From the IMG/VR virus record IMGVR_UViG_3300042455_001086, positions 1 to 64,000 of that record: a stretch of DNA of 64,000 nt. One strand, written 5' to 3'. Position 1 is the first letter of the stretch. Every line of letters starts with the position of its first letter. A program made the position numbers and the translations under genes. This document shows, in pieces, positions 38,524 to 58,493 of the stretch. A model generated the notes under the pieces. It ran no database searches. It was not told where the DNA came from and worked only from the letters and a program-made list of their open reading frames with translations.

Positions 38524-38914
38524 GGGGGTGTTTTTGGATTTGACAGGTATTGGCTGAGGAATAAGGGCATGTAGGGACTAAGTTAATCTCTTTAAAAACT
38601 GACTTGGAAAACAACTGGCAATGTGCTAAACAAAATGGAAACTCTTGGATTAGTAAGAGGTTCTGAAGTTACTGTAGCTTAAGATAAGTTCGGAAACGGG
38701 GGGTCGGCAGACATATAACCTAGCAACAGAAGTCGTAGTTTGATAGAGCACACCGGATGGCTCTCTAAATCCGATTCGGGACCATTGGTTGTTGATTTAC
38801 GATGGTGAAGAACAAATCAACTATTTTGGGATATTAGAAAATATCAACCTAAACATGTAGTCCTTATCTGACAGGATATTATGGACCGGAGTTCGACTCT
38901 CCGCACCTCCACCA
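38524..38914 (+). ncRNA. ssrA: tmRNA
   Basis: 5' GGGGGTG..GGATTTGAC; 3' T-arm CGGAGTTCGACTCTCCG and CACCTCCACCA with G3.U70; tag ORF 38617-38682; promoter and boxA upstream. Confidence 0.95.
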
Positions 38915-41910: not shown

Positions 41911-42765
41911 AAAAAGCCTGAGATTACAGCTTGGTTTGAGAACCTTTTGAAGGATTATTTTTTCCCTTCGTATCCACCATCTTTTGAATGGTATTTCTCA
42001 GTGACGGTTTTTTAGGTATACCACTCCTTTAGGTTTGAATTACTCTCATCTTACTTGACTCTTTCCGAGGATGCCTCCCCAGTTCGTCCTTGCGGGATTA
42101 AAGGTTTTTCGGATAATTACACATCGACTTGGGATCTTTGTGTGCAATGAACGGCTCATTACTATGTAGTCACCTTTCATCCAAACCTGACGGACACTTT
42201 TCCTTTCTGTAGTTAATAATAGAATCATTACTTTCCATAAAGTATTTGTGTTGTGGATTGTGAAAGTAGTGGTCCGTCAACCAAGCCAACCCATCTTTTG
42301 AACGGATCGATACTTAACTACTCTCTGAAATGTCCCCATTTCCATATTTTTAGACTACTTCAAAACAATTCCCTTGGTAAGGAATAATTAGGGTTGGTAA
42401 CAGCACCATCTGTACACGAACATACCTTTCGGTTTTAAGTATCCTATTATATTGGAACACGCAATAATAAAATTGGATAATTCTATTTTTTGCAATATTC
42501 CTACGAGTTATTCCTATTGGTGTTCCCACCTCAAACTGACAACCCACATTGCCAGTTCATCTAACCACTTTCCCTACAGCGTTGCCCTCGGTACTAAAGG
42601 TTAAACGGTATCCCGCTTGTGTACTCAAGTTCAGTTACCCAAACCGCAAACCATTTACACGAATGATTCACTTTATCCCACTTTCGTGGTTTATTTTATG
42701 GACTATACACGGCCCAATATCTTTATCAGTTTCATTTCTTACTCCTGAAAGGATAATCTAATTTT
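41911..42765 (-). ncRNA. Large (~850 nt) structured ncRNA, probably GOLLD-class
   Basis: No credible ORF; GC richer than its surroundings; TAACTTTG promoter at 42803-42810 and boxA at 42766-42775; many hairpins; 3' hairpin plus U-run. Size and tRNA-proximal phage context fit GOLLD. Family assignment not verified. Confidence 0.65.
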
Positions 42766-47088: not shown

Positions 47089-47121
47089 CAAAGATATGTA
47101 TTTTATTTCAATCTACCAAAT
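47089..47121 (-). promoter_or_regulatory. Bacteroidota sigma70 promoter cassette (TTTG-N20-TATCTTTG); copies at 48455 and 48960, variants at 52485 and 54730
   Basis: caaagatatgtattttatttcaatctaccaaat is repeated. Other TAnnTTTG sites: 3199, 30721, 37403, 38489, 38966, 42803, 44273, 52858, 58447, 58861, 60671. Confidence 0.85.
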
Positions 47122-48362: not shown

Positions 48363-48648
48363 GTTTAAGATGAGTCGTGGACTTGTGTACCACTTGTCCC
48401 CCTTTAAGTTTCTCACTAACCCCGGATGTAGGGAAACTCACCTTATTTGTCTTACAAAGATATGTATTTTATTTCAATCTACCAAATCTTTTTTTAATTT
48501 TTGTTGAGGATTAATCCTAAATTTTTTCTTTAAGGCCCTTAATAAATCAGTTTTTATGTTAGTTTTAACAAATTTAACCCTTCCTGATTCACAAGTCCCT
48601 GATAAAACTTCCTTCATCATTCATTGTTTTTAATTGTTTATTTTTTGA

Positions 48649-48725
48649 ACTACCCATAGGACTCGAACCTACAACCTTCGGGCCGAAGTAGACCCGTGTG
48701 CAAACCAAATTTACACCATAAGTAG
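48649..48725 (-). ncRNA. tRNA-like RNA with an 8-nt anticodon loop
   Basis: CGGGT-CTACTTCG-GCCCG; intact D and T arms. Confidence 0.6.
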
Positions 48726-48819
48726 TTACGCAAGAAGACAGACAGGAATTAGTGTCGACAAATTTCCTTAGGCTATATGACCCATCTTCTTGTTAGGTTC
48801 GGTTAATTACTCCGAACTT

Positions 48820-48951: not shown

Positions 48952-48978
48952 TTGTTTAACAAAGATATGTATTTTATT

Positions 48979-49776
48979 TCAATCTACCAAATATTTCTTA
49001 TCCCAATCTTCAATTTTTTTCAAAAGTTCATCAATTGTGATGTCTGATTTTTTATTTTTAGATATATTATCATTATGAATCATCAATCTACAATTTGCGG
49101 GATGAGATATGATTTTTGGATCAATATTATTTTTAAATCCTTCATTTACAGAATAAATATGATCCCTACTTATTCCACCTAAATTGTTACCCCTATTTTT
49201 AGGTTTATACCAACCATATTTCTCAATAAGAGAAAATTCAAATTCACTTGGGAAGTCGGACAAATTAAAATTAAATTTAGAGTCTTGTTTGTATTTGCAA
49301 TATTCCGTCATCAAATGTCTCTCATGTATCCTTCTACATTCAACGCAACAGAATTTATTGTTTCGTTTTTTAAAATTTAATGGTATATCACAATTACTAC
49401 ATTTACTTGGGTTTAATTTATAGTCGTTATACTCATCCAAAATACCTAATCTTTTAAAATTAGATTGGATTATATTTTGTTTACCTTCTTCGGACATATT
49501 ATATTTAAGTCCTTTTTTGTTTACCTGATTTATTACAGATTTACTACATTCTTTGGAACAATATAAATTAAGTCTATTTTCATAATCTATAAAATTTTCG
49601 CATTTTTTACATTTTTTAGGATTTTGTAAATATTTTTCCCTTGAGTTTTTTTTTAAACTTTCTCCTACTTTAGTGTAGTCTCTTAAATTTTTATTTACAT
49701 ATATATTTCTACAAGTTAAAGAACAATATGTATTTTTTTCTTTAATATCTTTACCACAATTTTTACAATTTTTCAT
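48979..49776 (-). CDS. Zn-finger HNH homing endonuclease in the tRNA cluster
   Basis: CxxC..YCS..C repeats; SRDHIYSV..HPANC..N..K. Confidence 0.8.
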   Translation of the reverse strand: MKNCKNCGKDIKEKNTYCSLTCRNIYVNKNLRDYTKVGESLKKNSREKYLQNPKKCKKCENFIDYENRLNLYCSKECSKSVINQVNKKGLKYNMSEEGKQNIIQSNFKRLGILDEYNDYKLNPSKCSNCDIPLNFKKRNNKFCCVECRRIHERHLMTEYCKYKQDSKFNFNLSDFPSEFEFSLIEKYGWYKPKNRGNNLGGISRDHIYSVNEGFKNNIDPKIISHPANCRLMIHNDNISKNKKSDITIDELLKKIEDWDKKYLVD

Positions 49777-51378: not shown

Positions 51379-52062
51379 ATGAAAACACTATTCACAGAAG
51401 AAGAATATAAAAATTCAAAATCAACATCTAAATTACCTTGTGAATGTTTACTATGTAAAAAATCATTTCTTGTTGAAAAAAAACTAATAACTTATGAATT
51501 AAAAAATAATCGTAATCGTCATATCTATTGTTCTACCGAATGTTATTATAATGCTCAAAAAGTATTACCAATAATTTTTAAATGTAAAAATTGTAATTGT
51601 GAGTTTGACAGAAAAGAATCCTCAAATAAAAAAGATTCTTCTGGTAACTATTTTTGTTCTCAATCGTGTTCGACCACATTTAATAATAAAAACAAAACAC
51701 ACGGAAATCGACGCTCTAAACTTGAAATTTGGTTGGAGGACCAATTAAAAGTTATTTATCCCAACCTTCCAATCGACTTTAATAAAAAAGAAGTTATCGG
51801 TTCTGAATTAGACATTTATTTCCCAACACTTAATTTTGCAGTAGAATTAAATGGTATTTTTCATTATGAACCTATCTATGGTATAGATAAGTTAAATAAA
51901 ATCCAAGAAAACGACCAATCTAAAACTAAACTTTGTCACGATTTAAAAATAGACCTCTGTATTATTGATGTTTCGGAACAAAAATATGTCAAACCCTCAA
52001 CATCAAAAAAATACCTTGATATTATCACCAATATTGTCAATGAACGTTTGTTAATCTCTTAG
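51379..52062 (+). CDS. Zn-finger PD-(D/E)XK endonuclease, antisense to the tRNA operon
   Basis: CxxC/FCS..C; RSKLE..ELDIY..AVELNGIFH. Confidence 0.75.
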   Translation: MKTLFTEEEYKNSKSTSKLPCECLLCKKSFLVEKKLITYELKNNRNRHIYCSTECYYNAQKVLPIIFKCKNCNCEFDRKESSNKKDSSGNYFCSQSCSTTFNNKNKTHGNRRSKLEIWLEDQLKVIYPNLPIDFNKKEVIGSELDIYFPTLNFAVELNGIFHYEPIYGIDKLNKIQENDQSKTKLCHDLKIDLCIIDVSEQKYVKPSTSKKYLDIITNIVNERLLIS

Positions 52063-52118
52063 CCGGCTTTACCCGTTTCCAACAATCACCTCGTGGCGGT
52101 GGATTAACTCCGATTGTT

Positions 52119-52190
52119 TAGCGTGTTGTGGACTCGAACCACCCCGTAGACGTTATGAGCGTCCCATGCAACCAATTACACCTTCACGCG
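52119..52190 (-). tRNA. tRNA-Met(CAU), initiator-like
   Basis: C1xU72 mismatch; GGACG-CTCATAA-CGTCT; lacks the three consecutive G-C pairs. Confidence 0.75.
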
Positions 52191-52195
52191 ATATG

Positions 52196-52302
52196 TAGTC
52201 AAAGAAGGATTCGAACCTATCACGAGATAAGTGTGAAATTCACCTTATCCCAAGGACTTTTGAGTATTGTGTCCCAGCGTCTACCAATTCCGCCACTTGA
52301 CT
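52196..52302 (-). ncRNA. Leu(CAA)-like tRNA with a 13-nt anticodon loop and extended V-arm
   Basis: GGGAC-ACAATACTCAAAA-GTCCT. Confidence 0.6.
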
Positions 52303-52525
52303 GTTTTTTGTAGTTTAGTAGTTAGATTAAACTCTCGTTTCACTATCTTAATCTAACAGGTTGATACACTTAACGAGTTTCCCGTTTCTTACAACCACAA
52401 TATTTCTAATTTCAATGAACTTCCTTCCTTTTTCTGGAGGTGGGGTTACCATCCCTAACTTCCCCACCTCCGTTGTTTGTTTTACAAAGATATGAAGAAT
52501 TTTTTAATCTACCAAATCTTTTTTG

Positions 52526-52817
52526 TACTTGGAGCGGGAATCGAACCCGCACGGGCAAATGCCCACAGGATTTTCTTACCACTATAGTTTTCACTACCAA
52601 CCAAATTGTTGTTTGTGGTCTGGACTATACCTTAACCTTATCTTTTTAGACTTAGGTTCTCCGTGTCTAGTCTCTACACCTTACTCATTTCTGAGTCTTG
52701 GCTCGGTATTCCCATTTTAAAAGGTTCACCGAATTTACGGAGTTCTACTCAGAGGGTTTCCACTCTGGCACTCAAATTATATAAGTCCGGCGTGTCTACC
52801 TATTCCACCACCCAAGC
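52526..52817 (-). tRNA. tRNA-Leu(UAA) interrupted by a group I intron
   Basis: Exon 1 ends GGACTT and exon 2 begins AAAATCC; long V-arm. Confidence 0.92.
52575..52782 (-). mobile_element. Group I intron (IC3-like, 208 nt) at U^AA
   Basis: AAATTCGGTGAA (P), AATACCGAGC (Q), GTAGAGACTAGAC (R), GTATAGTCC (S), terminal G. Confidence 0.92.
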
Positions 52818-52900
52818 ATTTTACCAATATGTCAAAGAACCTTTGTCTTTTGTTTTACAAATATAAAAACTTTTTTTCAATTACACAATACCCTTAAACG

Positions 52901-52929
52901 AAAAAACCCCTCTTTTTTGGAGAGGGGTT
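52901..52929 (-). terminator. Attenuator terminator A
   Basis: AACCCCTCT/AGAGGGGTT stem plus U-tract. Confidence 0.85.
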
Positions 52930-52955
52930 CATTTTAATTTTGTATGTATAAAATA

Positions 52956-53024
52956 TTACACCCTCTTCTTAAAAGTTGCCTCAGCTAAATCGCCCCCTAT
53001 CAATAATATGTGTAAATTTTTCAT
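52956..53024 (-). CDS. Leader peptide A (22 aa) of tRNA operon A
   Basis: MKNLHILLIGGDLAEATFKKRV; follows ATATTTAT and precedes a terminator. Confidence 0.75.
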   Translation of the reverse strand: MKNLHILLIGGDLAEATFKKRV

Positions 53025-53091
53025 TTGCGGTTTTATTTGTTTTGTTATAAATATATGATACTTTTTAAAAGTGTCAAGTTATTTAATTATT

Positions 53092-54700: not shown

Positions 54701-54782
54701 AAATTTTGTTTTTATATTAGTTATATCAACAAAGATATGTACTTTATTTTAATCTGCCAAATTTTTTTCAAACTTTTTTTTG

Positions 54783-56956: not shown

Positions 56957-57733
56957 TTATTTGTTTATTATTTCATTTAATTGGTTAATTAAGTAATTAA
57001 CATCACCAAAAATTATTTTATATTTTTTTGATACAACTTCCATTTTTTCTTTATCTAACACCAAACAATGTGGGTTTTTAGGATCCAAAAATAAATCATA
57101 TTTAGGGAGATAAAAGTCTGGATAATATAATTTATTTTTACCATTACTATTCACCCACTTTAATGGTTTAGGTCTAACCCAATCTACATTTTTTTCATCA
57201 AGGTACATCGCAACCTCTAACTCCCAAGTAGATTCTAAAGTCACATTTTTGTATTTTATAGTTTTTCTACTACCATTTCTGTATTTTCTACTTGTTGACG
57301 CTTCAATTCTACAATGTTCGGAACAAGTAACTTTATTACTATAATTTCTTTGTGTGAATAATTTATTACAAATTTTACAGTTAGTGTATTTTATTTTACA
57401 AGTTCCAAATTTTATAGTTTTAGATAATGATAATAAAATTTTATCTCTTGTTTCTTGTGATAAAGTCCTACCTACCAATGTTTTTGATATTTTATCTTTT
57501 GTTTCTTCATTACGCCTCCCTCTTTTTATGTTATTATATGTTGCCGCACAAGAATTACCACAAAATTTGTTTCTTTTTTTGTAGAAATCTAAATCACAAT
57601 CACATTGTAAACATTTATTTGGGTTTTTATAATATTCATCTCTTATAAGTTTTTTATTATTCTTAATAACTTCTACCGCAATTTTTTGTGCTTTTAATGC
57701 GTTTTCATAATGTCCAACATATAGTTCTTTCAT
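56957..57733 (-). CDS. Zn-finger/NUMOD3 PD-(D/E)XK homing endonuclease in the tRNA cluster
   Basis: CxxC, ETKDKIS repeats, ESTWE..YYPDFYL..LDPK. Confidence 0.78.
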   Translation of the reverse strand: MKELYVGHYENALKAQKIAVEVIKNNKKLIRDEYYKNPNKCLQCDCDLDFYKKRNKFCGNSCAATYNNIKRGRRNEETKDKISKTLVGRTLSQETRDKILLSLSKTIKFGTCKIKYTNCKICNKLFTQRNYSNKVTCSEHCRIEASTSRKYRNGSRKTIKYKNVTLESTWELEVAMYLDEKNVDWVRPKPLKWVNSNGKNKLYYPDFYLPKYDLFLDPKNPHCLVLDKEKMEVVSKKYKIIFGDVNYLINQLNEIINK

Positions 57734-57801
57734 AATCTACTTTCTATATAAATATCTCAAAAGTCAAAAAAAGTTAGTCGAACCTATAAATTATTTATCG
57801 T

Positions 57802-57874
57802 TGCAAGTGCCGGATTCGAACCGTTCTTGAATGTCCCAAACATCCCGTGCTCACCTGTTTACACCACACTCGCA
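57802..57874 (-). tRNA. tRNA-Pro(UGG)
   Basis: GGATG-TTTGGGA-CATTC. Confidence 0.8.
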
Positions 57875-57943
57875 ATAAAAATCAATACCCTGACTCCTTT
57901 CGAGTTTTGGAGGACTCGTATCATTCATTCTGTATTGATTTAG

Positions 57944-58029
57944 AGGAAGCCTGAGGTGTCGATCCCCATACCGGTCAAGGTACCGCCCGTTTTCAAGACG
58001 GGGTTGCAGACCGCTGCAATTAGACTTCC
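57944..58029 (-). tRNA. tRNA-Ser(UGA), SelC-like 8/4 fold
   Basis: 8-bp acceptor; 6-bp D-stem with CGGT loop; CCCGT-CTTGAAA-ACGGG. Confidence 0.82.
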
Positions 58030-58038
58030 AATTTATTG

Positions 58039-58109
58039 TTGTTCCCCAAGGACTCGAACCTCGATTCCACGGACCAAAACCGCGTGTCCTGCCATTAGAC
58101 GAGGGAACA
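58039..58109 (-). tRNA. tRNA-Gln(UUG)
   Basis: CGCGG-TTTTGGT-CCGTG. Confidence 0.92.
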
Positions 58110-58119
58110 TTATGAAGCC

Positions 58120-58135
58120 AATATGTCAAAGAACT
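58120..58135 (-). promoter_or_regulatory. rrn-type boxA (AGTTCTTTGACATATT); also at 38508(+), 42766, 48138, 52037, 52412, 52832
   Basis: GTTC(T/A)TTGA occurs ahead of RNA genes. Confidence 0.75.
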
Positions 58136-58147
58136 TTTTCTTTTTTG

Positions 58148-58220
58148 AGGTTTCTATCGGGTTCGAACCGATGACTCCGGGTTACAAAGCCGGGATATTA
58201 CCAAACTATACTAAGAAACC
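58148..58220 (-). tRNA. tRNA-Thr(UGU)
   Basis: CCGGC-TTTGTAA-CCCGG. Confidence 0.88.
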
Positions 58221-58230
58221 AATATAAAAC

Positions 58231-58260
58231 AAAAAACCCAAGGTTTGTCGCCTTGGGTCT
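58231..58260 (-). terminator. Attenuator terminator B
   Basis: AGACCCAAGG/CCTTGGGTTT stem plus U-tract, directly before tRNA-Thr. Confidence 0.85.
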
Positions 58261-58291
58261 TATATTTCTTTATTATGTTTGTTAATCGTTA

Positions 58292-58399
58292 TTAACTCAT
58301 AAATGAAAATGCCCTCGACGGTTTAAGCGTGTTATAACAGAACGACCACTGATTGCGCGGTTGCTTGCTAATGACCATATGTCTAAGATTTGTTTTCAT
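58292..58399 (-). CDS. Leader peptide B (35 aa) of tRNA operon B
   Basis: MKTNLRHMVISKQPRNQWSFCYNTLKPSRAFSFMS; rich in rare G/C-ending codons. Confidence 0.78.
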   Translation of the reverse strand: MKTNLRHMVISKQPRNQWSFCYNTLKPSRAFSFMS

Positions 58400-58493
58400 T
58401 TTTGTTATAAATATATCGTTATTTCTAAAAGTTTTAATTTACTCTACAAAGATAGGTATTTTTTTCTAATAAACAAGTGTTTTTGGAAAAAAA

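What the first reader, a model, noticed from the sequence alone, without database searches (positions are those of the whole stretch)
58225..58460. Attenuator B mechanics: a long alternative hairpin across the stop codon, and rare-codon enrichment
Nested pairings GUCG/CGAC, GGG/CCC, AUUU/AAAU, UUAUG/CAUAA and GUUAAU/AUUAAC link the leader 3' end to the terminator 5' arm and loop, in competition with the 10-bp terminator. The leader uses CCG, TCG, ACG, CGC, AGG, CAG, AGC and GTC, which are atypical for this AT-rich genome, as expected for a sensitive sensor.
Basis: partly seen in the sequence, partly recalled or inferred. Interest (0 to 1): 0.72.

Follow-up and report, generated by a model that had tools for sequence, protein, structure and literature searches.

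The report
Leader-ORF attenuator before phage tRNA genes
A 257-kb freshwater phage places a short translated reading frame and a switchable stop signal for transcription directly in front of its tRNA-Thr gene, an amino-acid-operon style of control not described before for tRNA genes; this rests on sequence comparison only.

Summary
All five pairings exist, the terminator is real (11 bp plus a U-tract), and the 35-codon ORF is poor in preferred codons (CAI 0.36 against 0.68 for phage genes).

About 54 distinct relatives from viral and metagenome contigs show four things:
- The ORF stays open in every one; its indels are nearly all multiples of three.
- The terminator covaries.
- The leader's 3' strand covaries with the terminator's 5' arm. 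The antiterminator is therefore conserved, though it is weak in one subgroup.
- A third helix pairs the start-codon region with the ORF's 3' end and competes with the antiterminator.

A paralogous module at 52885-53078 has the same logic upstream of tRNA-Leu(UAA).

This is the architecture of a leader-peptide transcription attenuator. It lies 12 nt upstream of tRNA-Thr(UGU), which has no recognisable promoter of its own.

The "rare codons as sensor" idea is not supported. The rare codons lie in the GC-rich pairing strands. Modelling puts the read-through-promoting ribosome position at codons 1-10, which are mostly common codons.

What is sensed is unresolved and no transcription data exist. 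I rate it a new variant of a known kind, with confidence about 0.5.

The parts
58447..58476 (-). Promoter P1 of the Bacteroidota type: TTG, 19 nt, TATCTTTG
   Evidence: Pattern scan. Conserved in nearly all relatives but absent in L057.
58404..58415 (-). Second promoter-like motif, TATATTTATAAC, ending 4 nt before the ATG
   Evidence: Shared with module A. The core ATATTTATAA recurs 3-12 nt upstream of many start codons across the genome. Conserved in all relatives.
58292..58399 (-). Leader ORF: 35 codons plus TAA (MKTNLRHMVISKQPRNQWSFCYNTLKPSRAFSFMS)
   Evidence: Open in all 52 distinct nucleotide versions, while the other two frames carry at least 2 stops each. Indels are multiples of 3. Within-subgroup dN/dS is 0.07-0.15.
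58382..58401 (-). Segment 1: AAAUGAAAA (58401-58393) plus codons 4-6. It pairs with segment 2 as the anti-antiterminator and buries the start codon.
   Evidence: RNAalifold helix of 9 pairs, 96.8% of cells paired. Compensatory variants in L056, L023/L164 and L091.
58342..58381 (-). Internal helices of the leader: CAUAUGGUCAUU with CAGUGGUCGU, and the ACCGC/GUGGU hairpin. They carry the rare codons GTC, CCG, CGC, CAG and TCG.
   Evidence: helix 2, 92.8% paired.
58301..58321 (-). Segment 2: CCGUCGAGGGC (antiterminator 5' strand) followed by AUUUUCAUUU (partner of segment 1)
   Evidence: The leader's GGGC or GGGU matches the arm's AGACCC or AAACCC in every sequence where both are read.
58281..58296 (-). 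Hairpin across the stop codon (GUUAAU AACG AUUAAC). It is compatible with both states and lies inside the antiterminator loop.
   Evidence: 5 of its 6 pairs show compensatory changes, for example GUUAAA/UUUAAC in L055.
58221..58261 (-). Intrinsic terminator: stem 58261-58251 with 58243-58233, loop CGACAAA, and the U-tract and spacer down to 58221
   Evidence: Covaries among relatives.
58147..58220 (-). tRNA-Thr(UGU), starting 12 nt after the terminator stem with no recognisable promoter between them
   Evidence: It follows the module in 28 of the 29 relatives scanned with ARAGORN.
58118..58134 (-). Conserved motif GTTCTTTGACATATTGG between tRNA-Thr and tRNA-Gln. It may be a promoter or a processing signal; this is unresolved.
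   Evidence: Occurs only twice in the genome, both times just upstream of a tRNA. Conserved in relatives.
57800..58109 (-). Next tRNAs of the array: Gln(UUG) 58038-58109, Ser(UGA) 57945-58029, Pro(UGG) 57800-57874
   Evidence: The array order is conserved in relatives.
52885..53078 (-). Paralogous module A: promoter, 22-codon ORF 53024-52956 (MKNLHILLIGGDLAEATFKKRV), terminator 52929-52901. It lies upstream of tRNA-Leu(UAA).
   Evidence: Covariance-model hit of 31.6 bits. Same three-helix logic, with covariation.

Best explanation
This is a leader-ORF transcription attenuator at the head of the phage's tRNA array. One or two promoters start an RNA whose first 108 nt form a translated 35-codon ORF.

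The RNA has four interacting segments:
1. The start-codon region and codons 2-6.
2. The last 9 sense codons of the ORF.
3. The terminator's 5' arm with its A-rich flank.
4. The terminator's 3' arm with the U-tract.

The proposed mechanism has three cases (inferred):
- No ribosome on segment 1: segments 1 and 2 pair, segments 3 and 4 form the terminator, and transcription stops 12 nt before tRNA-Thr(UGU).
- A ribosome held on roughly the first ten codons when RNA polymerase reaches segment 3: segment 2 is free and pairs with segment 3, and polymerase reads into tRNA-Thr and possibly beyond.
- A ribosome that has run on to the last codons or the stop codon: it covers segment 2 or sits inside the antiterminator loop, and the terminator forms.

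Shown by sequence comparison: the ORF, the three mutually exclusive helices and their covariation. Inferred: that translation decides between them, and that the output is tRNA synthesis.

The signal sensed is unresolved. The best guess is the speed of decoding of the first codons: K2, the invariant T3 (ACA), and Thr again at codon 4 in 38 of 52 versions.
For: ORF:
- Open in 52 of 52 distinct versions, while the other frames each have at least 2 stops.
- Indels inside it are multiples of 3.
- dN/dS is 0.07-0.15 within the subgroup.

Terminator:
- Canonical form, and it covaries.

Antiterminator:
- On a sequence-only alignment 79.4% of cells are paired, against 17-49% when partners are slid. The covariation score is 0.300 against 0.179 for shuffles, with 0 of 500 reaching it.
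- Pair 21-92 is U-A in 12 sequences and C-G in 11. Pair 27-85 is C-G in 20 and U-A in 3.
- Leader GGGC or GGGU matches arm AGACCC or AAACCC wherever both are read.
- Native leader-plus-arm combinations gain -5.84 kcal/mol against -4.66 (sd 0.21) when permuted, with 0 of 5000 reaching the native value.
- The divergent clade has -14 to -17 kcal/mol antiterminators with lineage-specific matching arms.
- RNAalifold on each subgroup recovers the antiterminator.

Segment 1:2 helix:
-, with compensatory changes in L056, L023/L164 and L091.

Switch behaviour:
- The median fraction of the 5' arm paired with upstream sequence is 0.35 without a ribosome, 0.65-0.69 with one at codons 1-10, and 0.27-0.42 with one at codons 24-27.

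Context:
- There is no promoter motif between the terminator and tRNA-Thr, and this tRNA is the only one in the window directly preceded by a terminator.
- Paralogous module A has the same logic. Its segment-1 codons are L H I L L I; three UUR codons in six has P = 0.003. It lies upstream of tRNA-Leu(UAA).
Against: - No transcription data. The runs found were probably DNA or did not cover the ORF.
- The antiterminator is weak (about -2 kcal/mol) and no better than chimeras or shuffles in the core of group 2, such as L031, L038 and L046.
- RNAalifold on the whole-family alignment of the truncated region predicts nothing.
- I derived the tested structure from these same sequences, and the permutation tests do not correct for shared ancestry.
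- There is no run of regulatory codons. One Thr codon among the first eight in the window is not significant (P = 0.37).
- L164 lacks tRNA-Thr behind the module. In module A a promoter or the GTTCTTTGACATATTGG motif lies between the terminator and the tRNA. The modules could therefore be self-contained units.
- In the window itself, the modelled arm pairing hardly depends on ribosome position (0.62 both with no ribosome and with one at codons 1-14).
Confidence: 0.5

Rival explanations
1. A self-contained small gene or stable small RNA with a constitutive, somewhat leaky terminator. The 170-210 nt RNA, closed by its 5'-3' helix, is itself the product, as a small basic peptide and/or a trans-acting RNA. 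tRNA-Thr is made by fixed read-through. The alternative pairing has no regulatory role.
For: - The peptide pattern is conserved: M1, T3, M8, P14, W18, Y22, T24, S32, F33 and S35 are invariant.
- Purifying selection acts within the subgroup.
- With the full leader available, the terminator arm is insulated from upstream sequence in many relatives.
- L164, L091, L078 and module A have the module followed by a promoter-like motif rather than directly by a tRNA.
- The full-length fold is more stable than shuffles (z = -2.8).
Against: - It does not explain why the leader's 3' strand covaries with the terminator's 5' arm. That includes the C/U with G/A match, which the terminator itself does not require.
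- In L055 a frameshift changes the C-terminal peptide while the nucleotide sequence is kept.
- dN/dS between subgroups is 0.5-1.2.
- The fold prediction for the peptide is poor (pLDDT 57.6). No family matched in Pfam, PHROGs or the Atlas.
Confidence: 0.2
2. A regulated terminator/antiterminator switch set by something other than the ribosome: a phage or host RNA-binding protein, a processive antiterminator (as with lambda Q at PR'-tR'), or an RNA or small ligand. The ORF would be secondary.
For: - The three alternative helices are conserved.
- Two different promoter types lie upstream, one of them a motif that recurs across the phage genome. This fits temporal control by a change of polymerase or factor.
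- The antiterminator is weak in group 2 and might need a stabilising factor.
- There is no run of regulatory codons.
Against: - The ORF is kept open with 3n indels in all 52 versions.
- The stop codon always falls inside the antiterminator loop, 18-34 nt before the arm.
- The start codon lies inside segment 1.
- No Rfam family matched.
Confidence: 0.2
3. A type I toxin-antitoxin locus. The small ORF would be a toxin whose mRNA is kept silent by 5'-3' pairing (as in hok), with an antisense RNA made from the promoter-like site at 58253-58281 on the plus strand.
For: - The long-range helix sequestering the start codon resembles the hok fbi/tac pairing.
- A TTG-N18-TATGTTTG match lies on the opposite strand.
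Against: - The peptide is polar and basic and has no hydrophobic helix.
- The antisense promoter match is not conserved in close relatives, by inspection. About five chance matches to that pattern are expected in the window (my estimate).
- No plus-strand terminator lies beyond the ORF.
Confidence: 0.03

Closest known systems
Leader-peptide (ribosome-mediated) attenuators of amino-acid operons: trpL, thrL, leuL, hisL, pheL (Rfam Thr_leader, Leu_leader and others)
   Same: - A short translated leader ORF.
- An intrinsic terminator, a mutually exclusive antiterminator that shares the terminator's 5' arm, and a 1:2 helix overlapped by the ORF.
- A stop codon placed so that a terminating ribosome blocks the antiterminator.
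   Different: - The gene behind the terminator is a tRNA, not a biosynthetic operon.
- The element is in a phage, probably of Bacteroidota.
- Segment 1 contains the start codon itself.
- Segments 1 and 2 are about 85 nt apart, with internal helices between them.
- There is no run of regulatory codons in module B, though module A has L-H-I-L-L-I.
- There is no sequence similarity. The best Rfam scores are 21.6 bits (Thr_leader, on module A) and 19.5 bits (L10_leader), both far below threshold.
T-box riboswitches and the pheM-pheST attenuator (control of the tRNA-charging machinery by tRNA status)
   Same: A terminator/antiterminator decision tied, possibly, to the supply of a particular charged tRNA.
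   Different: - A T-box binds uncharged tRNA directly and has no ORF. No T-box features or Rfam hit were found here.
- The regulated genes in those systems are synthetases, not tRNA genes.
Lambda PR' - 6S RNA - tR' with Q antitermination
   Same: A phage promoter, a short terminated RNA of about 200 nt, and a strong intrinsic terminator in front of the genes to be switched on.
   Different: - The lambda 6S RNA has no conserved ORF and no antiterminator hairpin; Q modifies the polymerase instead.
- Here an RNA-encoded alternative structure covaries with the terminator.
Attenuator-derived small RNAs (rnTrpL of Sinorhizobium, PMC6614838) and the hok mRNA fold-back (fbi/tac)
   Same: The terminated leader RNA is a compact molecule closed 5' to 3'. 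It could persist and act in trans. Its start codon is buried in a long-range helix.
   Different: No target or toxicity is known here, and the peptide is not hydrophobic.

Membership tests
Ribosome-mediated (leader-peptide) transcription attenuator | A short leader ORF that is translated | tested here: inconclusive
   The ORF is open in 52 of 52 versions, has 3n indels, and has dN/dS of 0.07-0.15 within the subgroup. There is no ribosome profiling or peptide evidence. Between subgroups dN/dS is 0.5-1.2.
Ribosome-mediated (leader-peptide) transcription attenuator | An intrinsic terminator between the leader and the regulated gene, with no promoter in between | tested here: met
   An 11-bp GC-rich stem plus U-tract that covaries. 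tRNA-Thr starts 12 nt later, and no promoter motif was found between them.
Ribosome-mediated (leader-peptide) transcription attenuator | An antiterminator that shares a strand with the terminator and is conserved | tested here: met
   Covariation and chimera tests support it, as do the subgroup consensus folds. Caveats: it is weak in core group 2, and the whole-family RNAalifold run gave nothing.
Ribosome-mediated (leader-peptide) transcription attenuator | A 1:2 helix (anti-antiterminator) whose 5' strand lies in the translated region | tested here: met
   The start region pairs with UUUUCAUUU and flanks. 96.8% of cells are paired and compensatory variants exist. Masking segment 1 raises antiterminator pairing in 23-26 of 28 sequences.
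Ribosome-mediated (leader-peptide) transcription attenuator | Regulatory codons cognate to the regulated product, placed in segment 1 | tested here: inconclusive
   Module B: ACA at codon 3 is invariant and codon 4 is Thr in 38 of 52 versions, but this is not significant in the window (P = 0.37). Module A: 3 of 6 segment-1 codons are Leu UUR (P = 0.003), upstream of tRNA-Leu(UAA).
Ribosome-mediated (leader-peptide) transcription attenuator | Read-through that responds to translation or charged-tRNA supply | not testable with these tools
   The sequencing runs found were probably DNA or did not cover the ORF.
Any curated Rfam cis-regulatory leader or small RNA | A match at or above the family's gathering score | tested here: not met
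   Nothing reached threshold at 58221-58476 or 52885-53078. The best scores were 19.5-22.3 bits against thresholds of 44-60.
Type I toxin-antitoxin | A small hydrophobic toxin and a conserved antisense RNA | tested here: not met
   The peptide is polar and basic. The opposite-strand promoter match is not conserved.

The most novel reading that the evidence does not exclude
This clade of freshwater phages controls its tRNA genes by feedback. Each of at least two paralogous leader-ORF attenuators reads, through the first codons of its ORF, the supply of the charged tRNA encoded just behind its terminator: Thr ACA/ACU before tRNA-Thr(UGU), and Leu UUA/UUG before tRNA-Leu(UAA). tRNA transcription would then rise only when that tRNA limits translation, for instance after host tRNA depletion or cleavage.
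Probability: 0.22. Interest if true: 0.85.

Novelty: new variant of a known kind. Interest (0 to 1): 0.72.

Why it matters
Why phages carry tRNA genes, and how they express them, is still debated. A translation-sensing attenuator in front of tRNA genes would be the first case of tRNA supply regulated by the classical leader-peptide mechanism.

It would extend that mechanism to phages and to hosts with Bacteroidota-type promoters. It would also give a compact, testable RNA switch of about 180 nt, with natural compensatory variants already in hand to guide mutagenesis.

It further shows that a run of "rare codons" in an AT-rich genome can simply mark GC-rich RNA pairing strands.

Tried and rejected
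- **Rfam:** searches at gathering and E-value thresholds gave no family for the element.
- **Cultured-phage collection:** blastn and tblastn found no relative.
- **Peptide searches:** Pfam, PHROGs and the Atlas gave nothing. An HMM search of 1.8 billion proteins found only four short relatives.
- **RNA evidence:** of the four runs laid, three are probably DNA and the one true metatranscriptome has nothing on the ORF. This says nothing about termination.
- **Energy gain against dinucleotide shuffles:** significant for the window, L045 and L051 and marginal for L039, but not for L049, L033, L031, L037 or L036. With the whole leader available the gain is no better than shuffles. I first read this as evidence against a conserved antiterminator. 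The covariation and chimera tests later overturned that reading.
- **RNAalifold on the whole-family alignment of the truncated region:** no pairs predicted. Realigned subgroups were needed.
- **[quoted passage not shown]:** weakened. The whole tRNA array is syntenic among relatives and L164 lacks tRNA-Thr.
- **[quoted passage not shown]:** considered and set aside. It was noticed after the fact, and these codons lie in pairing strands where stalling should favour termination.
- **Antisense promoter and type I toxin-antitoxin:** rejected.

Full report
**Context.** The window is the first 64 kb of a 257-kb IMG/VR virus record with inverted terminal repeats. It is AT-rich, with 24-37% GC. It carries a tmRNA, a GOLLD RNA and at least 27 tRNA genes, almost all on the minus strand. 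Promoters of the form TTG-N19-TAnnTTTG precede several of the tRNAs. From my own knowledge this is the Bacteroidota sigma-A consensus, so a Bacteroidota host is an inference.

The finding lies on the minus strand. In order it contains:
- promoter P1, 58476-58447
- a second promoter-like motif, TATATTTATAAC, 58415-58404
- a 35-codon ORF, 58399-58292
- a hairpin across the stop codon, 58296-58281
- an intrinsic terminator, 58261-58233, followed by a U-tract
- tRNA-Thr(UGU), 12 nt later at 58220-58147
- Gln, Ser(UGA) and Pro tRNAs

**Check of the observation.** All five pairings exist at unique positions. As drawn, the hairpin is worth -9.0 kcal/mol; the terminator stem alone is worth -15.1. The equilibrium fold of the full RNA keeps the terminator.

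The codon claim also holds. Leader CAI is 0.36, against 0.68 ± 0.045 for 209 phage ORFs. Only 0.06% of random 34-codon CDS windows are as low.

**Relatives.** I collected about 54 distinct leader/terminator versions from four sources:
- a flanking-protein search
- three DNA pattern scans of viral and metagenome contigs
- three contigs reached through a profile search of 1.8 billion proteins
- a covariance model

They fall into three sets: the window's subgroup, a second large subgroup ("group 2") and a divergent clade (L023, L168, L056, L164). More distant modules exist in L091, L078 and L079.

**The ORF.** It is open in all 52 distinct nucleotide versions, at 35-40 codons. The other two frames carry at least two stops each. 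Indels inside it are multiples of three, while those outside are not. Within the window's subgroup dN/dS is 0.07-0.15.

Between subgroups dN/dS rises to 0.5-1.2. In L055 a one-base shift changes the C-terminal peptide while the nucleotide sequence is kept. An open frame of this length is therefore selected, but much of the sequence constraint acts on the RNA.

**The terminator.** It is canonical. Its distal stem differs between lineages with matched changes in both arms.

**The antiterminator.** The first test looked negative. The free-energy gain from adding the terminator's 5' arm to the upstream RNA beat dinucleotide shuffles in the window, L045 and L051 (and marginally in L039). It did not in L049, L033, L031, L037 or L036. 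RNAalifold on one alignment of the whole family predicted nothing.

Four other tests changed the verdict:
- *Chimeras.* Each leader pairs better with its own terminator arm than with arms from other family members. For 27 pairs the native mean is -6.76 against -5.40 ± 0.30. For 54 pairs and 32 arm types it is -5.84 against -4.66 ± 0.21. No permutation out of 5000 reached the native value in either run. 25 of the 32 arm types beat their median chimera.
- *Divergent clade.* Its antiterminators are long helices of -14 to -17 kcal/mol. The leader strand follows each lineage's own arm: GUCU.CGG with CCG.AGAC, GGUUCG with CGAACC, AUCUCGG with CCGAGAU, and UCCG with CGGA.
- *Pair counts.* On a MAFFT alignment not fitted to any structure, nine antiterminator pairs are formed in 79.4% of cells. 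With partners slid by 1-3 columns the figure is 17-49%. The covariation score is 0.300 against 0.179 ± 0.020 for shuffles. Pair 21-92 is U-A in 12 sequences and C-G in 11. Pair 27-85 is C-G in 20 and U-A in 3. In the larger set, every leader with GGGU has an AAACCC arm and every leader with GGGC has AGACCC. The terminator itself does not need this match, because that arm base pairs with U in either form.
Group 2 and the divergent clade give their own versions.

Three caveats apply. I derived the tested structure from these same sequences. The permutations do not correct for shared ancestry. In core group 2 the pairing is worth only about -2 kcal/mol.

AAAUGAAAA (58401-58393, with the start codon) and the next codons pair with UUUUCAUUU (58309-58301) and the bases just upstream of it. 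RNAalifold predicts this helix on the sequence alignment, and 96.8% of cells are paired. Lineage-specific versions keep it:
- GAUGAAAA with UUUUCAUC in L056
- a second helix, CUAA/UUAG, in group 2, replaced by ACAC/GUGU in L023 and L164
- AACUACAAU with AUUGUAGUU in the distant L091

This helix buries the start codon. Together with the adjacent GCUU/GGGC pairs it also occupies the strand that the antiterminator needs.

**Switch behaviour in the model.** I folded transcripts that end at the terminator loop. Without a ribosome, the median fraction of the 5' arm paired with upstream RNA is 0.35. Masking a 30-nt footprint centred on codons 1-10 raises it to 0.65-0.69, and it exceeds 0.5 in 23-26 of 28 sequences. 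A footprint at codons 24-27 lowers it to 0.27-0.42. This is equilibrium modelling, and in the window itself the effect is small.

**Rare codons.** Most of the rare codons lie in helices:
- GTC, CCG, CGC, CAG and TCG are in the internal helices.
- ACG is in the GCUU/GGGC pairs.
- CCG, TCG and AGG form the antiterminator's 5' strand.

Their G and C bases are explained by pairing with a GC-rich terminator in an AT-rich genome. A ribosome stalled on them should favour termination, not read-through. The first eight codons are common ones, apart from the semi-rare CTT at codon 5 in the window. ACA at codon 3 is invariant, and codon 4 is Thr in 38 of 52 versions. In the window alone, one Thr among seven codons is unremarkable (P = 0.37).

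**A paralogous module.** The covariance model also hits 52885-53059 (31.6 bits) and equivalent places in five relatives. This module has a very similar promoter, a 22-24-codon ORF with 3n indels, and a terminator.

Its full-length fold pairs codons 4-9 with the last codons. Its truncated fold pairs the last codons with the terminator's 5' arm: AGAGGG with CCCUCU in the window, and GGAGAUGG with CCAUCUCC in relatives.

Its segment-1 codons are L-H-I-L-L-I (three UUR codons in six, P = 0.003). The next gene is tRNA-Leu(UAA), which here carries a group I intron. This is probably the scan's "Attenuator A". It supports the attenuator architecture as a family trait.

**What is regulated.** tRNA-Thr is the only tRNA in the window directly preceded by a terminator, and no promoter motif fits in the 12 nt between them. 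It follows the module in 28 of the 29 relatives scanned with ARAGORN.

The linkage is weakened by three points:
- The whole array is syntenic (Thr-Gln-(Ser)-Pro-Lys-Val-Tyr-Asn-Ile-His-Arg), so the linkage is not independent evidence.
- L164 lacks tRNA-Thr.
- A conserved motif, GTTCTTTGACATATTGG, precedes tRNA-Gln and tRNA-Leu. In some relatives it directly follows the module's terminator.

If that motif is a promoter, the attenuator controls only tRNA-Thr, and module A may control nothing. If it is a processing signal, read-through feeds the whole array. I could not decide between these.

**Rivals.** Three alternatives are given in their own section: a self-contained small gene or small RNA, a factor-driven switch, and a type I toxin-antitoxin locus. 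The first does not explain the leader-arm covariation. The second does not explain the strictly kept ORF and the placement of its stop codon. The third fails on the nature of the peptide and the lack of a conserved antisense promoter.

**Comparison and novelty.** The architecture matches the defining structural features of leader-peptide attenuators (see the membership table). There is no sequence relation to any curated family. Full-text searches found no report of such an element in front of tRNA genes or in phages; the library is incomplete, so this is a weak negative. I rate it a new variant of a known kind. Everything rests on sequence comparison and thermodynamic modelling, and no experiment or transcript map supports the mechanism yet.

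Noticed in passing
window 52885-53078 (-): A paralogous leader-ORF, terminator and antiterminator module upstream of tRNA-Leu(UAA). Its early codons are L-H-I-L-L-I. Probably the scan's 'Attenuator A'.
   Followed up: partly
window 52525-52817 (-): tRNA-Leu(UAA) interrupted by a group I intron of about 208 nt at the classical anticodon-loop site (ARAGORN in intron mode; Rfam Intron_gpI 53.7 bits at 52600-52792). Relatives L051 and L168 have the same tRNA without the intron.
   Followed up: partly
window 52050-52118 (-): Weak match to an HDV-like ribozyme (RF02682, 29.4 bits, below the threshold of 44) directly after a weak tRNA with anticodon CAU at 52119-52190. A long-arm tRNA-like gene with a 38-nt insert lies at 52196-52302.
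   Followed up: no
window 41915-42325 (-) and 38524-38914 (+): A full-length GOLLD RNA (321.6 bits) and a tmRNA (110.2 bits), both encoded by the phage close to the tRNA array.
   Followed up: no
window 56957-57733 (-): A 258-aa ORF with weak PHROG matches to HNH and other endonucleases splits the tRNA array between Pro and Lys. It is absent at this place in most relatives, so it is probably a mobile homing-endonuclease insertion.
   Followed up: partly
window 58118-58134 (-) and 52824-52840 (-): The motif GTTCTTTGACATATTGG occurs exactly twice in the 257-kb genome, each time 7-10 nt upstream of a tRNA. It is conserved in relatives. Whether it is a promoter or a processing signal is unknown.
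   Followed up: partly
window 47089-47119, 48455-48485, 48960-48990 (-): Three identical copies of a 31-nt Bacteroidota-type promoter (TTGGTAGATTGAAATAAAATACATATCTTTG) in the tRNA region, with near copies at 52485-52515 and 54730-54760.
   Followed up: no
window 48647-48726 (-): ARAGORN reports a tRNA with a four-base anticodon (actt) and unassigned identity. It could be a frameshift-type tRNA or an artefact.
   Followed up: no
window 57945-58029 (-): A long-arm tRNA-Ser(UGA) missed by ARAGORN in the window. It scores 46.6 bits on Rfam tRNA-Sec, just under the threshold of 47. Its anticodon is UGA, so it is Ser and not Sec.
   Followed up: partly
genome-wide, e.g. 159352, 77323, 72885 (-): The motif ATATTTATAA recurs 3-12 nt upstream of many start codons, often right after a terminator. 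It is a candidate phage promoter giving nearly leaderless mRNAs.
   Followed up: partly
L079:5396-5633 (-); L091:3638-3846 (+); L078:267-451 (+): Distant modules with the same opening (MKT..HM), a small ORF and a terminator. One lies in front of tRNA-Phe; the others lie in front of the motif plus another tRNA. The family may be wider than the clade studied.
   Followed up: partly
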